Position numbers and translations under genes: made by a program
IMG/VR virus record: IMGVR_UViG_3300009158_000031
Coordinates: 1-64,000 of that record
Direction: 5' to 3' (one strand)
DNA length: 64,000 bases
In this document: positions 6,195 to 37,043 of the stretch, piece by piece
Layout: each line of letters begins with the position of its first letter
Position numbering within the stretch: the first letter of the stretch is position 1
The notes under the pieces: generated by a model
What the model saw: the letters and a program-made list of their open reading frames with translations, nothing else
The model's database searches: none
Told to the model about the DNA's origin: nothing

Positions 6195-7511
6195 ATGAAA
6201 GATAAAAAACTCCAAGTATTCTATGCAGTTCAAGTATCAAACTTTACATTAGTAAATGGCAAACCTAAATGGTTATTGCGAAATGATGCATGCACTAACA
6301 TTGCAATCGGAATCATCTCTACGGTTTTAAAGAGATATCCTGATCAATTCAAATTTTTAATTAAACTTCCTTCTGCTTATGATACAGTAGATGTGGTTCA
6401 ATTAGAAGATCTATTTAAACCAGAATTTCATAAAGATATCGAATTTCTTATTGATGATATCCCTCATTCTCCAGTAACTAGTCGCTATCATTTCGATATG
6501 CAACGATATCTCGTTCATCCTGAATATGCAAAAGCTTTCAGCGAAGTAGATCTTATGATTAATGATGAAAATACATTAACGAAGAATTGGCGAGTACTTT
6601 TCAATGAAATGAAATTAACCATCCCAATCATTTCTACGAATTATTTCCTCGATTCACCTATCGCAAATAAAGTTCCAGAAAAACTTCGTTATTATGAACG
6701 TCAAATGGAATCTTTTATTACATCGGATATTGCTGCATTTCAATGCGAAGCTGGCAGAGTCGAAGCTATGGAAGCTTATGATGTTTTATTTAAGACTCGT
6801 GAGATTCTAGCTCCTCAATCCGTATGGGGTGTTGGTGCACATTATGCCGAAATCGAAGAATATCATACAGATAAAAAATTCGAGATACCTACAATTTACT
6901 TTGGCAATCGTATTTCGGATACTGCAAATCGTTATACTAATTATGATACATTCGCCGAAGCAATTGGTATTCTATCGACTATCACCGATAAACCATTTCG
7001 AGCAGTAATGCTTAATCCAACTCGTAAAGTTACTGCCGATCAATTGAATTTAATTGCAGATCTATCTAAACATCAAGTTGAAGTAATGTCTAACGATGAA
7101 AAATTCACTCGTCAAGATTATCTAACATTCATCAACAAATCTCATATTGCTTGTAACCTATTCGTCACCGAAGTTCATGGTGGTGTTACTCATTGTGAAG
7201 CAATGATGGCTAAGAATATTTTGGTAATGCCTAAAGTAAATAATTACTGGCACAAAATGAAAAAGGCTGGTCATGAAGATTATCCTCTATTCACTGCACT
7301 CGATTCAACGAATTCTCATAAACCAGATGCTCGTGATGTAGCAGAAAAATTGAAGATTGCTCTTAATTATATAGATACTCCTATAGAAAATCAATTAAGA
7401 GAATTATGTCATAATGTCGGTTATAAATACGAATCTTACGAATCTGCTTGTGATCGTATCGTAAATGATATACGTTCGCTTGTTCTTCCTATCTTGAATA
7501 ATAAAAACTAA
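6195..7511 (+). CDS. GT-B glycosyltransferase (GT4/alpha-glucosyltransferase-like)
   Basis: C-terminal donor-binding motif EVHGGVTHCEAMMAKNILVMP and YFGNR. Lies in the modification operon. Confidence 0.7.
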   Translation: MKDKKLQVFYAVQVSNFTLVNGKPKWLLRNDACTNIAIGIISTVLKRYPDQFKFLIKLPSAYDTVDVVQLEDLFKPEFHKDIEFLIDDIPHSPVTSRYHFDMQRYLVHPEYAKAFSEVDLMINDENTLTKNWRVLFNEMKLTIPIISTNYFLDSPIANKVPEKLRYYERQMESFITSDIAAFQCEAGRVEAMEAYDVLFKTREILAPQSVWGVGAHYAEIEEYHTDKKFEIPTIYFGNRISDTANRYTNYDTFAEAIGILSTITDKPFRAVMLNPTRKVTADQLNLIADLSKHQVEVMSNDEKFTRQDYLTFINKSHIACNLFVTEVHGGVTHCEAMMAKNILVMPKVNNYWHKMKKAGHEDYPLFTALDSTNSHKPDARDVAEKLKIALNYIDTPIENQLRELCHNVGYKYESYESACDRIVNDIRSLVLPILNNKN

Positions 7512-18652: not shown

Positions 18653-19915
18653 ATGGCTACTGGACCATACACCAATTCGTTAAACTTTCGTTTAAACCGA
18701 ACAAAACCTCTAAATTATACAGATTTAGATAATAACTTTAGATATCCAAATCAATGGGGACTCGATCGATCATATCTGTCAGGTATGATGGTTGTTTCGT
18801 ATGATTTTGGTTATACTGCATCAGATTCAATATCTATGTATATTGCTTCTAGCGATCATACGAGTACTATGCTTAATGCTCCAGGATTAACTGGTGCTCA
18901 ATGGACTGCAATTGCAGTTCCTAGTGCTGGATATGTTGGTCCAACCGGACCTCAAGGTGGAATTGGTGCTCAAGGTGCTGGATCTCAAGGATCTCAAGGT
19001 CCTCAAGGTTATCAAGGTGTTACCGGTTTTCAAGGAGTTCAAGGATCTCAAGGAGCTACTGGTATTCAAGGACATACTGGATATCAAGGGGTTCAAGGTA
19101 CTAAAGGAGATCAAGGTTTTAAAGGAGATCAAGGATTCCAAGGAGCTCAAGGTTATACTGGTAATAAAGGAGATCAAGGTTTTCAAGGTATTCAAGGAAC
19201 TGTAGGTAATCAAGGATTCCAAGGAGCTCAAGGAGAACAAGGAGATCAAGGTAACTCTATTACTGGATCTCAAGGAGATCAAGGATTTCAGGGAGATCAA
19301 GGATTTCAGGGAGATCAAGGTACTAAAGGAGATCAAGGTATTCAAGGTATTACTGGGCCAGGAGTTGGGTCTCAAGGACCTACTGGTTTCCAAGGTATTC
19401 AAGGAGCTAAAGGAGATCAAGGATTTCAAGGTATTCAAGGATCTAAAGGAGATCAAGGATTTACTGGATTTCAGGGTAATCAAGGACCTACCGGTTTCCA
19501 AGGTAATCGAGGTAATCAAGGATATCAAGGAGATCAAGGTTATCAGGGATATCAAGGTTATCAGGGATATCAAGGAGATCAAGGATTTCAAGGATTCGAT
19601 ACAGCATATGCTGCTATAAATAATCAAGTTTCTAGTTACACATTAGTGTTAGCCGATGCTGGTAAATTAGTGGAAATAGATAATGCCGCATCTTCAATTC
19701 TTACGGTTCCTTTGAATGCATCGGTTGCTTTTCCTGTAGGTACTCAAATTATTATTGCTAGACTTGGTACTGGTGAGGTGAGCGTTGTTGGTACTGGTGG
19801 TGTAACGGTTGTTAGTGCAAATTCATTTACATTCTTAAATAATCGATACTCATCTGCATCTCTCATAAAAAGAGGTACCAATGCATGGTATCTATTTGGA
19901 GATCTTAAACCTTAA
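18653..19915 (+). CDS. Collagen-like tail/head fibre protein
   Basis: N-terminal PLNYTDLDNNF fibre-attachment motif, a long G-X-Q collagen tract, and a C-terminal YTLVLADAGK domain typical of phage fibres. Confidence 0.85.
   Translation: MATGPYTNSLNFRLNRTKPLNYTDLDNNFRYPNQWGLDRSYLSGMMVVSYDFGYTASDSISMYIASSDHTSTMLNAPGLTGAQWTAIAVPSAGYVGPTGPQGGIGAQGAGSQGSQGPQGYQGVTGFQGVQGSQGATGIQGHTGYQGVQGTKGDQGFKGDQGFQGAQGYTGNKGDQGFQGIQGTVGNQGFQGAQGEQGDQGNSITGSQGDQGFQGDQGFQGDQGTKGDQGIQGITGPGVGSQGPTGFQGIQGAKGDQGFQGIQGSKGDQGFTGFQGNQGPTGFQGNRGNQGYQGDQGYQGYQGYQGYQGDQGFQGFDTAYAAINNQVSSYTLVLADAGKLVEIDNAASSILTVPLNASVAFPVGTQIIIARLGTGEVSVVGTGGVTVVSANSFTFLNNRYSSASLIKRGTNAWYLFGDLKP
18929..19600 (+). repeat. Collagen Gly-X-Y coding repeats (GFQ/GDQ/GYQ)
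   Basis: 9-nt periodic caagg repeats. Confidence 0.9.
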
Positions 19916-19930
19916 TAAATTTAAAACGAT

Positions 19931-20659
19931 ATGATAATTGGATCTATAGGAACTGTTAGTTCTACTTGGGAACCACCAATACCTATGAGTGGTTTAATGG
20001 AATGGTATGAACCTGGTAATACGGCCGGTATTATCATTGCCAATCCACCGACCACGCCTATGGATGAGATGATAAACCTTGCTAATCCAACAGGCTCACC
20101 AAAATATCAACAATTATTTGTTTCTGAATTTGGAAGTGATTTACTTGGAGCTACCACGATAACAACAAATGCAACTTCGAATAGTTGGAGTAATTCAACG
20201 GATTGGAGTTCTATGACTGCATATACAGTAATTATCATATCTAAATATAACGATCCATCAAATAATCTAGAAAATACTTTTACAAACTTAGGTGGACCAG
20301 TCACGTTTAACTTAGGTAATGGTAATAATGGTGGTCATGGAAAAATAAATTTATGTATAGTCAATGGAGATGTTTTATACGCAGGAGATGCCGCCGATAT
20401 ACTTTGGGGAATGTATACTTTATGCGGTAGCACAACCATTAAATTAAATTTTTATAGAAATGCGAATCCAACTTCAATTCTAAGTCCACCTGCTAATTTC
20501 CGACCTCTTCCCGGAGGAACCCTGATTTTTTCATTTGATCCACCTGAAACATCTTCGTCGGTTGGTGCGGTTTTGCTCTATAATAGAATAATAACCGATG
20601 ATGAAAGAAATTCGATATTTCAACATTATAAGAAACAATTTCCTTTATCTGATACTTAA
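19931..20659 (+). CDS. Fibre-associated protein, LamG/ConA-like
   Basis: GLMEWY...VGAVLLYNRIITDDE pattern; follows the fibre gene. Confidence 0.55.
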   Translation: MIIGSIGTVSSTWEPPIPMSGLMEWYEPGNTAGIIIANPPTTPMDEMINLANPTGSPKYQQLFVSEFGSDLLGATTITTNATSNSWSNSTDWSSMTAYTVIIISKYNDPSNNLENTFTNLGGPVTFNLGNGNNGGHGKINLCIVNGDVLYAGDAADILWGMYTLCGSTTIKLNFYRNANPTSILSPPANFRPLPGGTLIFSFDPPETSSSVGAVLLYNRIITDDERNSIFQHYKKQFPLSDT

Positions 20660-20667
20660 CATACAAC

Positions 20668-20699
20668 AAAAGCTCTAGAAATTAATCTAGAGCTTTTTT
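20668..20699. terminator. Bidirectional rho-independent terminator
   Basis: AAAAGCTCTAGA-aattaa-TCTAGAGCTTTT lies between the convergent + gene and the tmRNA. Confidence 0.85.
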
Positions 20700-20713
20700 C
20701 ATTTAAGTGGAAG

Positions 20714-21149
20714 TGGAGCTGGAGGGAATCGAACCCTCGTCTTGTTCAGCTAATACTAAGAATTCATTTACAGGCTTAGTTTGGTTTATGACACCAACAA
20801 ACTTTTGTGCATTTCGTTTTTCTTGTTGACTTAATGCTCGGTCAAGTTTACTCTTCGGTATAAGCCGAATTTCACAGAACAATTAACAGCGATCTTAATG
20901 GGTTACTGATTGTTCTCGGATGGTACTACTAACCCTTTTTCCCGGTGTGCACATTTTTTTAATATCAGTAAGTGCGACTGATTGGTTAGGCAGCGATAGC
21001 TACTTCACCACCAACGAATGCCATAGCATCTTCGAAGGTAAAAGTTGACGTATTGTCAGTTATTGTTTTGATAGGTAATTTAAGTGTTTCCATCTAACAC
21101 TGCCTGCATTCAAAGAACTACGACTGCCAATCGATGCCTGGTCAGCCCC
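20714..21149 (-). ncRNA. ssrA: tmRNA
   Basis: 5' GGGGCTG pairs with 3' CAGCTCC-A, giving the G3:U Ala identity. T-arm GAGGGTTCGATTCCCTC. Internal tag frame 21057-20986 reads DNTSTFTFEDAMAFVGGEVAIAA*. Confidence 0.95.
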
Positions 21150-21189
21150 ATATTAATTTGTGTATGTATTATATGTATACTACAGAAAC

Positions 21190-21218
21190 AAAAAAAGGAG
21201 AGTACGAATACTCTCCTT
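21190..21218 (-). terminator. Rho-independent terminator (UUCG loop)
   Basis: Minus strand AAGGAGAGTA-TTCG-TACTCTCCTT followed by a T run, downstream of the lipoprotein gene. Confidence 0.85.
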
Positions 21219-21240
21219 AATGCGATTGATGTTGGTACAA

Positions 21241-21408
21241 TTACTTAGTAGTAGCAGTATCAACACAAGTGGCTTTGCAAGTGGTATCAACCGAAGTTGA
21301 ATCTGTTGCAACCATCGTAGAATCAGTTGCTGTTGCAGTTGATTCAGGAGCATTTCCACAAGAAGCTAAAGCTACCGTTGCGATTAATGCGAAAATTACG
21401 TTTTTCAT
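21241..21408 (-). CDS. 55-aa lipoprotein (missed by the ORF track)
   Basis: MKNVIFALIATVALAS-CGNAPESTATATDSTMVATDSTSVDTTCKATCVDTATTK*. It has an SPII lipobox (LAS-C) and its own terminator. Confidence 0.85.
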   Translation of the reverse strand: MKNVIFALIATVALASCGNAPESTATATDSTMVATDSTSVDTTCKATCVDTATTK

Positions 21409-21472
21409 AAATTAATTATTTTAAATTGTTATAAGATAGTTATATGTAAGCCTAGGTTCGTTAGTTTTGGTA

Positions 21473-21540
21473 TTGTTAACAAGTTTCCTAAAATAAATGT
21501 TAAAATATTTTTTTATTCCACAAAAAAGTATTATATTTGT
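21473..21540 (+). promoter_or_regulatory. Bacteroidota-type promoter, copy of 3089-3156
   Basis: 32 identical bp with 3125-3156; TAnnTTTG at 21532-21539. Confidence 0.8.
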
Positions 21541-21562
21541 TATAACCAATTAAATAAATTAT

Positions 21563-21763
21563 ATGAGCATCACAAAACAAATTGAAGAAAAAATCCAAAA
21601 TGATCCAATCTTTGCAGAATTATACGAACAACACGAATCTGCAAAATTCCATCGTTTACTCAATAAGACAATAAACATTCAAGAAGCACTATCTAACTTC
21701 TTTAATGAAACTCCCATGAACAAAAATGAAAATCCTTCATATAATAAATTACATAACATATAA
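21563..21763 (+). CDS. Hypothetical protein
   Basis: First ORF after the promoter. Confidence 0.65.
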   Translation: MSITKQIEEKIQNDPIFAELYEQHESAKFHRLLNKTINIQEALSNFFNETPMNKNENPSYNKLHNI

Positions 21764-35267: not shown

Positions 35268-37043
35268 ATGGCAAAGCTTAACAAGATATTCACACCCAAT
35301 AGGATTGGATACCAACAACTTATTAATGATACATACCTTTACCTGATAGATACTTACTCTCAGGCACAAACTGTATTTTCTAAGGCTTCGCCTTATGGAC
35401 AATTACTTGATGTAATTAATAACTTCTCTCAGCTATTCTTCTTATATTTAGAAGATGCGATAGTGGAAAATAACATATTAACTGCACAGAAACAAAAATC
35501 TATTTATGGATTATCCCGATTAGTTGGGCACAATCCAACTAGAGCACTTTCTGCACAAGGAACTATTCGAGTTAAAATGAAACCTGGTGCTCAATCTGAT
35601 GTTAATGCGTCTTACCTTTTATTTCTTAATAAGAGTAAATTAAATTGCATAAATAATGGATTAGATTATTTTGTCCAAATGGGTAATGCTCTAGGTAATA
35701 CTAAAATAGATTCAAACAATATTGGATTTACTAGTTTTAAATTAATTCAAGGTATATTAGATACGCAAACCGCTATATCTAATGGAGATCCTCTACAAAC
35801 TTATAATTTCCAAACCGATAGACCTATAGAAAACGATATGGTTTATGTTTTTGTTAATGGAGAACCTTTTGATATTAAAGACTCTCTATACGATATGACT
35901 AGAGATCAAAAGCAATGTATGGTTAAAACTGGTGTTGCCGGTGGTATTGACGTTATTTTTGGAAATGAAGATTATGGATACATTCCTCCTTTTGGTAATA
36001 AAATTATGGTTGAATATGTAAAAACTGATGGTTTTCAAGGAAATATTTTTGGAAAAGGTAATTCAATACAATTCAAATGGGCAGATCCTGCATATACTAA
36101 TACCGGAGAAGAAATTGATATTAATGAATTTTTTATAACAGAAATAGAAAAACCTCTTATTTTAGGTGCAGATGAAGAACCGGTAGAATTAACAAAACTA
36201 ATTGCTCCTAAAACTTCTAGATCTTTTGTCCTAGCAAATCCAGACAATTACGTTAATTTACTTTCAAGATTTAATTATTCATATGTGGATGCATATACTA
36301 CAAAAGATGATGGATTCGTTGCAGATGACAATGTGATTTATTTATTTTTGCTACCAGATATTTCTAGAAGATTATCCAAAAATGCAGATTATTTTACAAC
36401 AGATATCAAAAACTTCTATTTAGATACAGATGAAAAAGATGCAATTATTTCATATATTAATCAAAGTGGAAGACAGATAATTTCAACAGAATTAAGTGTT
36501 GTTGATCCGGTTATTAAAAAATATGCGGTAAATGTTTTTCTTAGAGTATTTGATACGGTAGATACAACAACGATTAAAAATGACGTTATCAATCAAATAA
36601 CAAATTACTTAATTAATGTTACTCGAAGAGACAGAGTTCCTAAATCGGATTTGGTTGCTATTATTGAGGCAATTAACGGAGTAGATTCAGTAGATGTAAC
36701 TTTCGTTTCTCAAGAAAATGAAGATGCAATTATTGATGGATTTTATTATAGAGTAGAAAAGACCTCTTCTATAGTTAGATCATTAACAACCGAGACTTTA
36801 AAGAAAATAACGGTTGCACCTGGTCAAAATCCCAATTTAGGATTAGACGAATTTGGTGATATTGTTATCGAACAAAATGAAGTACCTATTATTAGAGGTG
36901 GATGGTATGATCGAAATAATAATTTCTATGAAGAAGGATTAAGTGAAAGAGATTTCTCTTCGGTTAACGTCATCATAAAAAGTGTAATTCCGGAAACTCT
37001 ATCTACTAGAATAACCATGAAAAATAAAGATGCCATTAAATAA
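35268..37043 (+). CDS. Baseplate wedge protein (gp6/baseplate J-like)
   Basis: TAQKQKSIYGLSRLVGHNP, VIFGNEDYGYIP, GADEEP and AINGVDSV. Confidence 0.85.
   Translation: MAKLNKIFTPNRIGYQQLINDTYLYLIDTYSQAQTVFSKASPYGQLLDVINNFSQLFFLYLEDAIVENNILTAQKQKSIYGLSRLVGHNPTRALSAQGTIRVKMKPGAQSDVNASYLLFLNKSKLNCINNGLDYFVQMGNALGNTKIDSNNIGFTSFKLIQGILDTQTAISNGDPLQTYNFQTDRPIENDMVYVFVNGEPFDIKDSLYDMTRDQKQCMVKTGVAGGIDVIFGNEDYGYIPPFGNKIMVEYVKTDGFQGNIFGKGNSIQFKWADPAYTNTGEEIDINEFFITEIEKPLILGADEEPVELTKLIAPKTSRSFVLANPDNYVNLLSRFNYSYVDAYTTKDDGFVADDNVIYLFLLPDISRRLSKNADYFTTDIKNFYLDTDEKDAIISYINQSGRQIISTELSVVDPVIKKYAVNVFLRVFDTVDTTTIKNDVINQITNYLINVTRRDRVPKSDLVAIIEAINGVDSVDVTFVSQENEDAIIDGFYYRVEKTSSIVRSLTTETLKKITVAPGQNPNLGLDEFGDIVIEQNEVPIIRGGWYDRNNNFYEEGLSERDFSSVNVIIKSVIPETLSTRITMKNKDAIK

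What the first reader, a model, noticed from the sequence alone, without database searches (positions are those of the whole stretch)
20714..21149. Phage tmRNA with an unusually long 23-aa tag
It has an intact tRNA-Ala-like domain (G3:U), about 436 nt, and CCA is not encoded. The predicted tag DNTSTFTFEDAMAFVGGEVAIAA is about twice the usual ~10 aa but keeps a terminal IAA degron. The extra hydrophobic/acidic segment could alter protease or adaptor choice. Phage tmRNAs are known but uncommon, and may free ribosomes stalled by host mRNA- or tRNA-cleaving defences. The resume codon was inferred from the upstream ATAACT.
Basis: partly seen in the sequence, partly recalled or inferred. Interest (0 to 1): 0.6.

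Follow-up and report, generated by a model that had tools for sequence, protein, structure and literature searches.

The report
Jumbo-phage tmRNA with conserved long tag
A 254-kb lake phage carries its own expressed ribosome-rescue RNA (tmRNA), and its 23-residue tag belongs to a conserved long-tag family that I found only in phage DNA, which suggests these viruses label stalled proteins in a way of their own.

Summary
Window 20714-21149, minus strand, is a full-length one-piece tmRNA (Rfam RF00023, 85.6 bits against a cut-off of 47). It has G3:U and no encoded CCA. ARAGORN misses it. The window is part of a 254-kb IMG/VR jumbo-phage record whose nearest relatives are phages of Bacteroidota hosts. 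Outside the window, the same genome encodes SmpB, a CCA-adding enzyme, a Ro60/TROVE protein and a T4 Rnl1-like RNA ligase. Contigs from four lake metatranscriptome runs cover the tmRNA gene almost end to end, while its neighbours have no cover.

The long tag is not a misreading. 28 distinct viral tmRNAs share the same core, and the core varies mainly at third codon positions (entropy 0.30/0.17/0.85, p=7e-5). The acceptor stem, T stem and PK1 stem 1 covary. A scan of 185,579 species genomes found the tag only on one phage-like tRNA-array contig. Tags in 33 cellular genomes of the likely host phylum are 8-10 residues.

Phage tmRNA with SmpB is already published. The phage-restricted, conserved 15-residue extension in front of a canonical-looking degron appears undescribed. 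What recognises the extension is unknown. My best guess is a second protease or adaptor contact. Novelty: new variant of a known kind. Interest 0.6.

The parts
20714..21149 (-). tmRNA (ssrA) gene, 436 nt from G1 to the discriminator A. The Rfam match runs on to 20711, over CUU where CCA would be.
   Evidence: Rfam RF00023 at 85.6 bits, full model. Metatranscriptome contigs cover 20713-21141.
21143..21149 (-). 5' strand of the acceptor stem (GGGGCUG), holding G3 of the G3:U alanine identity pair.
   Evidence: Sequence. In 27 relatives all 189 acceptor cells are paired, G3:U is invariant, and three positions covary.
20714..20738 (-). T arm (stem 5 bp, loop UUCGAUU), 3' strand of the acceptor stem and the discriminator A. 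The next bases, 20713-20711, are CUU, not CCA.
   Evidence: T stem is paired in 135 of 135 cells, with covariation at all 5 pairs.
21070..21101 (-). Pseudoknot PK1 (tmRNA positions 49-80).
   Evidence: Rfam structure line. Stem 1 is paired in 128 of 131 cells with covariation. The stem 2 count was spoiled by a 1-nt misalignment.
21058..21063 (-). AUAACU, positions -6 to -1 before the resume codon.
   Evidence: Aligned to the consensus AAUAAuU in front of the resume codon. The role of positions -6 to +1 is described in PMC3985003.
21013..21057 (-). Tag codons 1-15 (DNTSTFTFEDAMAFV): the resume codon GAC and the phage-specific extension.
   Evidence: The same core occurs in 28 distinct viral tmRNAs. 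Entropy by codon position in the 12-codon core of the extension is 0.30/0.17/0.85, permutation p=7e-5.
20989..21012 (-). Tag codons 16-23 (GGEVAIAA): a tail that looks like a canonical short tag.
   Evidence: Sequence. Family tags end in AVAA (18), AIAA (5), VVLA (3), AVSA (1) and ALAA (1). Cellular tags of the phylum end in ALAA, AMAA or RLAA.
20986..20988 (-). UAA stop codon of the tag frame.
   Evidence: Sequence.
20668..20697 (.). Two-way intrinsic terminator hairpin (12 bp) just past the tmRNA 3' end. It also ends the + strand ORF 19931-20659.
21195..21218 (-). Terminator of the preceding minus-strand gene. It sets the tmRNA apart as its own transcription unit.
   Evidence: RNA contig depth is zero from 21196 to 21681.
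21168..21173 (-). TATAAT hexamer 19 nt upstream of G1, a possible -10 box that would give a short leader for RNase P to remove.
   Evidence: Seen by eye. The sigma-70 scan found no full promoter, so this is unverified.

Best explanation
This is a working, phage-encoded transfer-messenger RNA of a freshwater jumbo phage whose host is probably in Bacteroidota.

Inferred from how tmRNA works in general: it is transcribed as its own unit and trimmed. It receives CCA from a CCA-adding enzyme, and the phage encodes one. The host alanyl-tRNA synthetase charges it with alanine through G3:U. It then enters stalled ribosomes with SmpB, which this phage also encodes. The ribosome switches to the GAC resume codon and adds Ala plus 23 residues.

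Shown here: the gene, its fold, its expression, and selection on the tag as a peptide.

The tag has two parts. The last eight residues resemble an ordinary short ssrA degron ending A-I-A-A. This is the kind of end that ClpXP or ClpAP reads in studied bacteria. In front of it lies a 15-residue extension that is conserved in 28 phage tmRNAs and was not found in cellular ones.

My best guess (inference, about 0.35) is that the extension is a second recognition element, for an adaptor or for another protease such as Lon. That would parallel the extended Mycoplasma tag. It would let the phage dispose of truncated proteins quickly, recycle ribosomes and amino acids when messages are cut during infection or by host RNA-targeting defences, and do so without relying on the host's own tmRNA.
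For: Identity and fold:
- Rfam match at 85.6 bits over the full model.
- Acceptor stem, T stem and PK1 stem 1 are kept through compensatory changes in 27 relatives, and G3:U is invariant.

Expression:
- In four lake metatranscriptome runs from four studies, contigs lie on 20713-21141. One is a single 428-nt contig with no mismatch.
- Depth on the tmRNA is 22-1250, against zero on the flanking genes.

The tag is read as a peptide:
- 28 distinct tmRNAs share the core.
- Third-position wobble is seen in the extension alone, p=7e-5.
- Tag lengths differ by whole codons.
- ARAGORN calls the same long tags in 19 relatives.

Viral setting: IMG/VR record of 254 kb, tail fibre and baseplate genes, T4-type clamp loader closest to Tenacibaculum PTm1/5, PAU and Lak phages.

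Partner genes in the same genome:
- SmpB at 160 bits, with its C-terminal tail present.
- tRNA nucleotidyltransferase.
- The phage's two tRNA genes also lack an encoded CCA.
- A Rnl1-like RNA ligase and a TROVE/Ro60-like protein beside SmpB.

Phage-restricted tag:
- A pattern scan of 185,579 species genomes gave 56 hits. 55 lie in 53 long and 2 short non-tag ORFs. One is a 4.5-kb contig packed with tRNAs, in a MAG that also has its own canonical tmRNA.
- Tags in 33 cellular genomes of the phylum are 8-10 residues.
- No GenBank phage carries the tag region.
Against: - No experiment shows charging, tagging or degradation.
- The RNA evidence comes from assembled contigs, which cannot give strand, exact ends or expression level.
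- ARAGORN does not call this gene, and it chooses a shorter downstream start in four relatives.
- Four complete genomes with the same tag family lack SmpB, so the phage SmpB is not a fixed part of the system.
- No Lon, SspB or RF-1 family gene was found in the phage. Its ClpP-like gene looks more like a head-maturation protease. So no phage-encoded reader of the extension is in sight.
- The host is inferred, not shown.
- The cellular scan used one exact degenerate pattern and would miss diverged cellular versions.
Confidence: 0.8

Rival explanations
1. The ribosome resumes further downstream, for example at the GGU GGU GAA region. The real tag is then about 8 residues, and the conserved 45 nt upstream matter as RNA, not as codons.
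For: ARAGORN picks such short downstream tags in four family members (L074, L140, L142, L153). The last eight residues on their own look like a normal short tag.
Against: - The 12 extension codons vary mainly at third positions (0.30/0.17/0.85, p=7e-5).
- Replacements are conservative (F/Y/W, M/L, A/S, V/I).
- Lengths differ by whole codons.
- GAC aligns with the consensus resume codon behind the AAUAAnU context and lies 12 nt after PK1, whereas a downstream start would lie about 57 nt after it.
- ARAGORN itself calls the long form in 19 relatives.
Confidence: 0.05
2. The gene is a passive piece of host DNA, such as an ssrA copy or attachment-site remnant picked up by faulty excision, with no role for the phage.
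For: tmRNA 3' ends are common prophage attachment sites. Most of the 70 viral loci sharing the 3' 24-mer hold only a fragment.
Against: - The gene is full length with all helices intact and covarying within a phage family.
- It is expressed.
- Its tag type was not found in cellular genomes.
- It is longer (436 nt) than every tmRNA match over cut-off in the sampled phylum (97 genomes, 349-405 nt).
- The genome adds SmpB and a CCA-adding enzyme.
- The gene lies among tail genes in a phage of lytic T4-like make-up.
Confidence: 0.02
3. The RNA is a functional tmRNA, but the long tag is not mainly a degradation signal. The extension might give tagged chains another fate (sequestration, use as a signal of host state, or saturation of host proteases so that phage proteins are spared), or the RNA might compete with host tmRNA.
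For: - There is strong peptide-level conservation of a segment that a simple degron does not need.
- At least three other unrelated long-tag groups occur in related jumbo phages, some ending in ELV or EVA rather than AA.
- Cells mainly need ribosome release, not proteolysis (PMC8012679).
- A TLD-only tmRNA in phage DS6A has been proposed as an inhibitor (PMC4131195).
Against: 23 of the 28 family tags keep an A-V/I-A-A end (one more ends ALAA), which is typical of ClpX/ClpA degrons (PMC3985003). Nothing here points to a specific alternative partner.
Confidence: 0.13

Closest known systems
Chromosomal one-piece tmRNA (ssrA) of Bacteroidota
   Same: Same architecture: acceptor stem with G3:U, T arm, PK1, tag frame without a start codon, stop codon, 3' pseudoknot region. 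The acceptor GGGGCUG/CAGCUCC and the absence of an encoded CCA are as in the Saprospiraceae and Ginsengibacter genes. The last eight tag residues resemble their 9-residue tags.
   Different: - The tag is 23 residues, against 8-10 in 33 sampled genomes.
- The RNA is 436 nt, against 349-405 in 97 genomes.
- It is encoded by a virus.
- The 15-residue extension was not found in 185,579 species genomes, apart from one phage-like contig.
tmRNA and SmpB genes of huge phages (Al-Shayeb et al. 2020, PMC7162821) and Lak megaphages
   Same: A large phage of the same broad lineage that carries both tmRNA and SmpB. The phage SmpB here is 45-47% identical to those of Lak-B phages and the 735-kb phage. The paper reports both genes in huge phages.
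   Different: The two published genomes with a clear tmRNA have ordinary 10-residue tags (LR756500 and Lak-B5). The paper used ARAGORN, which misses this gene. I found no description of conserved long tags.
Extended ssrA tag of Mycoplasma/Mesoplasma, read by Lon (Gur & Sauer 2008; Ge & Karzai 2009, as cited in PMC3985003)
   Same: A tmRNA tag well over 20 residues, in which the extra length carries recognition for a protease other than ClpXP. This is the best precedent for a functional tag extension.
   Different: The Mycoplasma tag ends in AFA and evolved where ClpXP is absent. This one keeps an AIAA end, shows no sequence likeness to the Mycoplasma tag, is viral, and has no known reader.
tmRNAs of isolated phages (mycobacteriophage Bxz1 group, Bacillus phage G, Melnitz and pelagimyophages)
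   Same: Phage-borne ssrA genes. 2.3% of 18,146 phage genomes carry one (PMC9004378; PMC4131195).
   Different: Those are unrelated in sequence. Melnitz has a two-piece form under a riboswitch, and DS6A has only the tRNA-like domain. None in the GenBank phage collection matches this tag region.

Membership tests
tmRNA (Rfam RF00023, one-piece) | Score at or above the curated covariance-model threshold over the full model | tested here: met
   85.6 bits against 47, model positions 1-374, E=8e-32.
tmRNA (Rfam RF00023, one-piece) | tRNA-Ala-like domain: 7-bp acceptor stem formed by the two ends, G3:U pair, T arm, discriminator A | tested here: met
   Sequence. In 27 relatives the acceptor and T stems are 100% paired with compensatory changes, and G3:U is invariant.
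tmRNA (Rfam RF00023, one-piece) | 3'-terminal CCA (encoded or added) | tested here: inconclusive
   CCA is not encoded (CUU follows the discriminator), as in the Bacteroidota genes looked at. The phage encodes a tRNA nucleotidyltransferase. RNA contigs end at 20713, which fits CCA addition but does not prove it.
tmRNA (Rfam RF00023, one-piece) | Pseudoknot PK1 shortly upstream of the resume codon | tested here: met
   Rfam structure. Stem 1 is paired in 128 of 131 cells with covariation. The resume codon lies 12 nt after PK1. The stem 2 count is unreliable because of misalignment.
tmRNA (Rfam RF00023, one-piece) | Internal open frame without a start codon, which encodes a tag with a hydrophobic, Ala-rich C-terminus and ends in a stop codon | tested here: met
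   23 codons plus UAA, ending in AIAA. Selection at the peptide level is shown by codon periodicity.
tmRNA (Rfam RF00023, one-piece) | SmpB partner available | tested here: met
   SmpB gene in the same phage genome (G000:C1:116243-116647, 160 bits), with the C-terminal tail motif aligned to solved SmpB structures.
tmRNA (Rfam RF00023, one-piece) | Present in cells as a discrete stable RNA | tested here: met
   In four RNA runs, contigs are confined to 20713-21141 and the flanks have zero depth. These are contigs only, so strand and exact ends are not shown.
tmRNA (Rfam RF00023, one-piece) | Alanine charging and trans-translation activity | not testable with these tools
   Needs biochemistry or genetics.
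ClpXP-type ssrA degron | C-terminal A-L/V/I-A-A recognised by ClpX or ClpA | tested here: inconclusive
   The sequence motif AIAA is present, and the family mostly ends in AVAA. Recognition by a protease was not tested. The rule comes from PMC3985003.
Lon-read extended tag (Mycoplasma type) | Extended tag with an AFA-type end, in a lineage that lacks ClpXP | tested here: not met
   The end is AIAA, not AFA. The control genome of the likely host phylum (Bacteroides thetaiotaomicron) has ClpP. So this is an analogy of principle only.

The most novel reading that the evidence does not exclude
Jumbo phages of lakes have evolved their own private tagging codes. At least four unrelated, conserved long-tag families (23-39 residues) sit on phage tmRNAs. 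The largest is the one in this window. Its 15-residue extension would be read by a dedicated host or phage factor, so that products of phage-driven trans-translation take a different route from those tagged by the host's tmRNA. This could mean faster or alternative proteolysis, or escape from a host response that monitors its own tmRNA system.
Probability: 0.3. Interest if true: 0.75.

Novelty: new variant of a known kind. Interest (0 to 1): 0.6.

Why it matters
tmRNA tags are the classic bacterial degradation signal, and short versions are widely used as tools. Here a virus carries the whole front end of the pathway: tmRNA, SmpB and a CCA-adding enzyme. It writes a different and much longer tag, which is conserved as a peptide across many phages and was not seen in cells.

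If the extension has its own reader, it would be a new degron-adaptor pair and a new way for phages to manage host translation during takeover or under RNA-cleaving defence.

There is also a practical point. ARAGORN, the standard tmRNA finder in phage surveys, misses this gene and calls a truncated or wrong tag for seven relatives (shorter downstream starts in four, odd calls in three). Published counts of phage tmRNAs and their tags are therefore likely to be too low.

Tried and rejected
- ARAGORN on the window and on the whole genome found no tmRNA at default or -ps90 settings. At -ps80 it gave 33 calls; the tail of the output that I read was junk, and I did not check whether the true locus was among them.
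- blastn of the tmRNA, of its tag region and of a typical family member against 50,697 GenBank phage records found nothing. The only matches were 30-50 nt of the tRNA-like 3' end in crAss-like phage tmRNAs and Listeria fragments.
- The scan of viral contigs with the 3' 24-mer mostly returned attachment-site fragments and tRNAs.
- The first Rfam call on loci exceeded the size limit and was resent with fewer loci.
- My first T-loop pattern was wrong and found nothing. It was corrected.
- Five extracted 'tmRNAs' were script artefacts or had an unclear resume codon. They were left out of the counts.
- The PK1 stem 2 pair count (53%) reflects a 1-nt MAFFT misalignment, so I did not use it.
- In the genome contigs tag scan, 55 of 56 hits were chance matches outside any tmRNA: 53 in long protein ORFs and 2 in short ORFs with no tag-like end.
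- Searches of the phage genome for a reader of the tag or other rescue factors found no Lon_C, SspB, RF-1/ArfB or RtcB.
- The ClpP-family ORF is only remotely like true ClpP, and its best PHROG is a head-maturation protease. I left it out of the mechanism.
- Linkage with SmpB across the family was rejected as a rule: only 2 of 15 records have SmpB, and four complete genomes lack it.
- Tag type following phage phylogeny is not supported by the one gene tested.
- Literature searches found no mention of the tag motif and no discussion of long phage tags.
- Not run: complex prediction (the tag is shorter than the 30 residues required, and I claim no protein pair), the large protein searches, the metagenome-contig scan and structure prediction.
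No genetic code other than table 11 was used.

Full report
**1. Observation**

Rfam's tmRNA model (RF00023) matches window 20711-21149 on the minus strand over its full length, at 85.6 bits against a gathering score of 47, E=8e-32. The same search of the whole genome record gives this one hit only.

Reading the minus strand:
- The ends pair as GGGGCUG with CAGCUCC, giving G3:U.
- The discriminator A (20714) is followed by CUU, so CCA is not encoded.

The CM alignment puts GAC on the consensus resume codon, behind the consensus AAUAAuU context. It lies 12 nt after PK1. ARAGORN finds nothing here. Terminator hairpins bracket the gene at 20668-20697 and 21195-21218, and the neighbouring genes are on the other strand.

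**2. Setting**

The window is bases 1-64000 of a 254,393-bp IMG/VR virus record (linear, CheckV 83%) with 33.4% G+C.
- Around the tmRNA are a collagen-like tail fibre (18653-19915) and a baseplate wedge protein (35268-37043).
- The T4-type clamp loader is closest to those of Tenacibaculum phages PTm1/PTm5, phage PAU and the Prevotella Lak megaphages.
- The tmRNA's acceptor stem matches the Saprospiraceae and Ginsengibacter tmRNA genes, and like all three Bacteroidota genes examined (Flavobacterium included) it lacks an encoded CCA.
- Its 3' end resembles the tmRNAs of crAss-like phages.
- An identical copy of the tmRNA and its neighbour lies on a 134-kb contig from another sample.
- Public runs holding the stretch are freshwater or lake metagenomes.

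I infer a lake jumbo phage with a Bacteroidota host. The host is not shown.

**3. Partner genes (outside the window)**

- The same genome encodes SmpB (G000:C1:116243-116647; 160 bits). Its C-terminal tail motif aligns to solved SmpB structures.
- Directly upstream of SmpB is a TROVE/Ro60-like RNA-binding protein. Downstream are a small winged-helix protein and a tRNA nucleotidyltransferase.
- The phage's two tRNA genes (Leu-UAG, Met) also lack an encoded CCA. A T4 Rnl1-like RNA ligase sits beside them.
- A RimK-like ATP-grasp enzyme lies nearby.
- No Lon, SspB, RF-1/ArfB or RtcB gene was found.
- A ClpP-family ORF is more like a head-maturation protease.

**4. Expression**

In four lake metatranscriptome runs from four studies, assembled contigs lie on 20713-21141.
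- One run has a single 428-nt contig (20713-21140) with no mismatch.
- Summed contig depth on the tmRNA is 22-1250, while 19900-20547 and 21196-21681 have none.

The empty flanks argue against DNA carry-over. Contigs cannot show strand or exact ends. Loose ends in these runs look like related tmRNA variants from the same lakes.

**5. Relatives and the tag**

Two pattern scans of IMG/VR gave 190 loci. A script that requires a T arm and a G3:U acceptor stem extracted 68 distinct candidate full-length tmRNAs. Five were script artefacts or had an unclear resume codon and were dropped, which leaves 63. Rfam confirmed every long-tag family member that I submitted to it.

28 distinct sequences, of 367-466 nt, share one long-tag family of 23-28 residues. 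Its core is S-T/S-x-T-F/W-E-D-A-M-A/S-F-V-G-A-D-Y-A-V-A-A. The window's tag is one of them.

In the gapless 20-codon core of 23 sequences:
- Entropy by codon position is 0.31/0.20/0.82.
- In the 12 codons of the extension alone it is 0.30/0.17/0.85, permutation p=7e-5.

Replacements are conservative, and lengths differ by whole codons. ARAGORN independently calls the same long tags in 19 family loci, picks a shorter downstream start in four, gives odd calls in three, and misses three.

In an alignment of 27 members:
- The acceptor stem is paired in 189 of 189 cells, with up to four pair types per position and an invariant G3:U.
- The T stem is paired in 135 of 135 cells, with covariation at all five pairs.
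- PK1 stem 1 is paired in 128 of 131 cells.

**6. Is the tag cellular?**

A degenerate pattern for F-E-D-A-M-A/S-F-V/I was scanned over one genome for each of 185,579 species and gave 56 hits. 55 are chance matches: 53 lie inside long protein ORFs and 2 in short ORFs without a tag-like end. The remaining hit is a 4.5-kb contig with 13 tRNA genes and a tmRNA of this family, binned into a MAG that also has its own canonical tmRNA (167 bits, 9-residue tag). That contig is most simply a phage tRNA-array fragment.

In 101 genomes drawn from the phylum of a Flavobacterium genome, 97 had a tmRNA match over the cut-off, all 349-405 nt long. The 33 cellular tags I extracted are 8-10 residues.

Published huge phages LR756500 and Lak-B5 have 10-residue tags. 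No GenBank phage matches the tag region, and no paper in the library contains the motif.

**7. Wider pattern**

- Among the 63 usable distinct viral tmRNAs from the scan, 38 have tags of 23-39 residues. The scan pattern favours this lineage, so this is not a frequency estimate.
- Beside the main family there are at least three other conserved long-tag groups.
- One of those groups reappears in a weak tmRNA-like hit in the 735-kb phage LR756501.
- Many members sit in phage tRNA arrays, three of them next to GOLLD RNA.
- Of 15 records tested, only the window's phage (its second copy) and one other encode SmpB. Four complete genomes of the family lack it. Most family members must therefore use host SmpB.
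- By clamp-loader identity the window's phage is nearer to phages with other long-tag groups (44-45%) than to complete genomes with the same tag family (35-42%). This hints at exchange of tmRNA genes among jumbo phages, but it rests on one gene only.

**8. Mechanism**

Shown: the gene, its fold, its expression, selection on the tag as a peptide, and partner genes in the same genome.

Inferred from established tmRNA biology (PMC3985003): 5' processing, CCA addition, charging by AlaRS through G3:U, entry with SmpB and EF-Tu, resume-codon placement by the -6 to +1 context, and degradation through the A-I-A-A end by ClpXP or ClpAP.

The tag looks like a canonical short tag (last eight residues) with a 15-residue insert in front. 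The best precedent for a functional extension is the Mycoplasma tag read by Lon. I therefore favour a second recognition element for an adaptor or another protease, at modest confidence.

That idea is untested.

**9. Comparison and verdict**

Phage tmRNAs are known (2.3% of phage genomes, PMC9004378; list in PMC4131195). tmRNA with SmpB in huge phages is published (PMC7162821).

As far as I can find, two things are new: a phage-restricted, peptide-conserved long-tag family, and several other long-tag groups in related jumbo phages. There is direct evidence that this member is expressed. There is also the practical finding that ARAGORN misses it or truncates its relatives' tags.

I rate it a new variant of a known kind, with interest 0.6.

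Noticed in passing
G000:C1:114575-117814 (outside the window; L073:6576-9814): A four-gene cluster on one strand: TROVE/Ro60-like RNA-binding protein, SmpB, a small winged-helix protein and a tRNA nucleotidyltransferase. A Ro60-like protein next to SmpB in a phage suggests an RNA quality-control module.
   Followed up: partly
G000:C1:239262-241014 (outside the window): A T4 Rnl1-like RNA ligase (65.6 bits) lies beside the phage's only two tRNA genes (Leu-UAG, Met-CAU). Both tRNA genes lack an encoded CCA. This points to tRNA repair.
   Followed up: partly
G000:C1:109121-110626 (L073:1122-2627): A RimK-like ATP-grasp protein with a weak C-terminal Zn_protease match. Its PHROG name is ribosomal protein S6 modification enzyme. 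It may be another ribosome-directed function.
   Followed up: no
G000:C1:191323-191850 (L302:5324-5851): A ClpP-family ORF of 175 aa lies among auxiliary genes (AdoMet decarboxylase, NUDIX, phosphoesterase). Its best PHROG is a head-maturation protease, and it is only remotely like true ClpP. Whether it could act on tagged proteins is open.
   Followed up: partly
L089:2810-3221, L187:4451-4861, L190:6933-7342: GOLLD RNA (268-306 bits) sits within a few kb of family tmRNAs and large tRNA arrays on jumbo-phage contigs.
   Followed up: no
L055:1017-1606; L062:4780-4897 and 7082-7261: ROOL RNA lies beside an array of more than 25 tRNAs on an 89-kb viral contig. A Hatchet ribozyme and RAGATH-22 RNA lie on a 97-kb viral contig.
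   Followed up: no
L091, L104, L157, L026; L108, L137, L258; L172, L175, L020; L080, L186: Related viral tmRNAs carry other conserved long-tag groups (23-39 residues). One group reappears in a weak tmRNA-like hit in the published 735-kb phage LR756501. Some groups end in ELV or EVA instead of AA.
   Followed up: partly
window 20714-21149; L019, L162, L179, L074, L140, L142, L153, L123, L170, L149: ARAGORN misses three family tmRNAs, including this one. In seven others it reports a truncated or wrong tag. Phage surveys built on ARAGORN may undercount or mis-tag this family.
   Followed up: yes
L222/L269 (contig C130 of MAG G020) and G020:C4:32373-32725: The phage-like tmRNA binned in this MAG has the same acceptor stem (GGGGGCG) as the MAG's own canonical tmRNA. 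Across the family, acceptor stems vary among forms also seen in cellular tmRNAs of the phylum. The tRNA-like domain may track the host while the tag stays phage-specific.
   Followed up: no
window 21009-21127: Metatranscriptome contigs match only this conserved stretch of the tmRNA and then run on into unlike sequence (loose ends at 21009, 21039, 21094). These are probably transcripts of related phage tmRNAs in the same lakes.
   Followed up: no
window 21225-21400, minus strand: Just upstream of the tmRNA, a short minus-strand ORF appears to encode a small Thr/Ser/Ala-rich protein with a lipoprotein-like start. This was seen by eye and ends at the terminator at 21195-21218.
   Followed up: no
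window 18653-19915: A collagen-like tail fibre protein matches many PHROG tail-fibre families, the best at E=2e-62.
   Followed up: no
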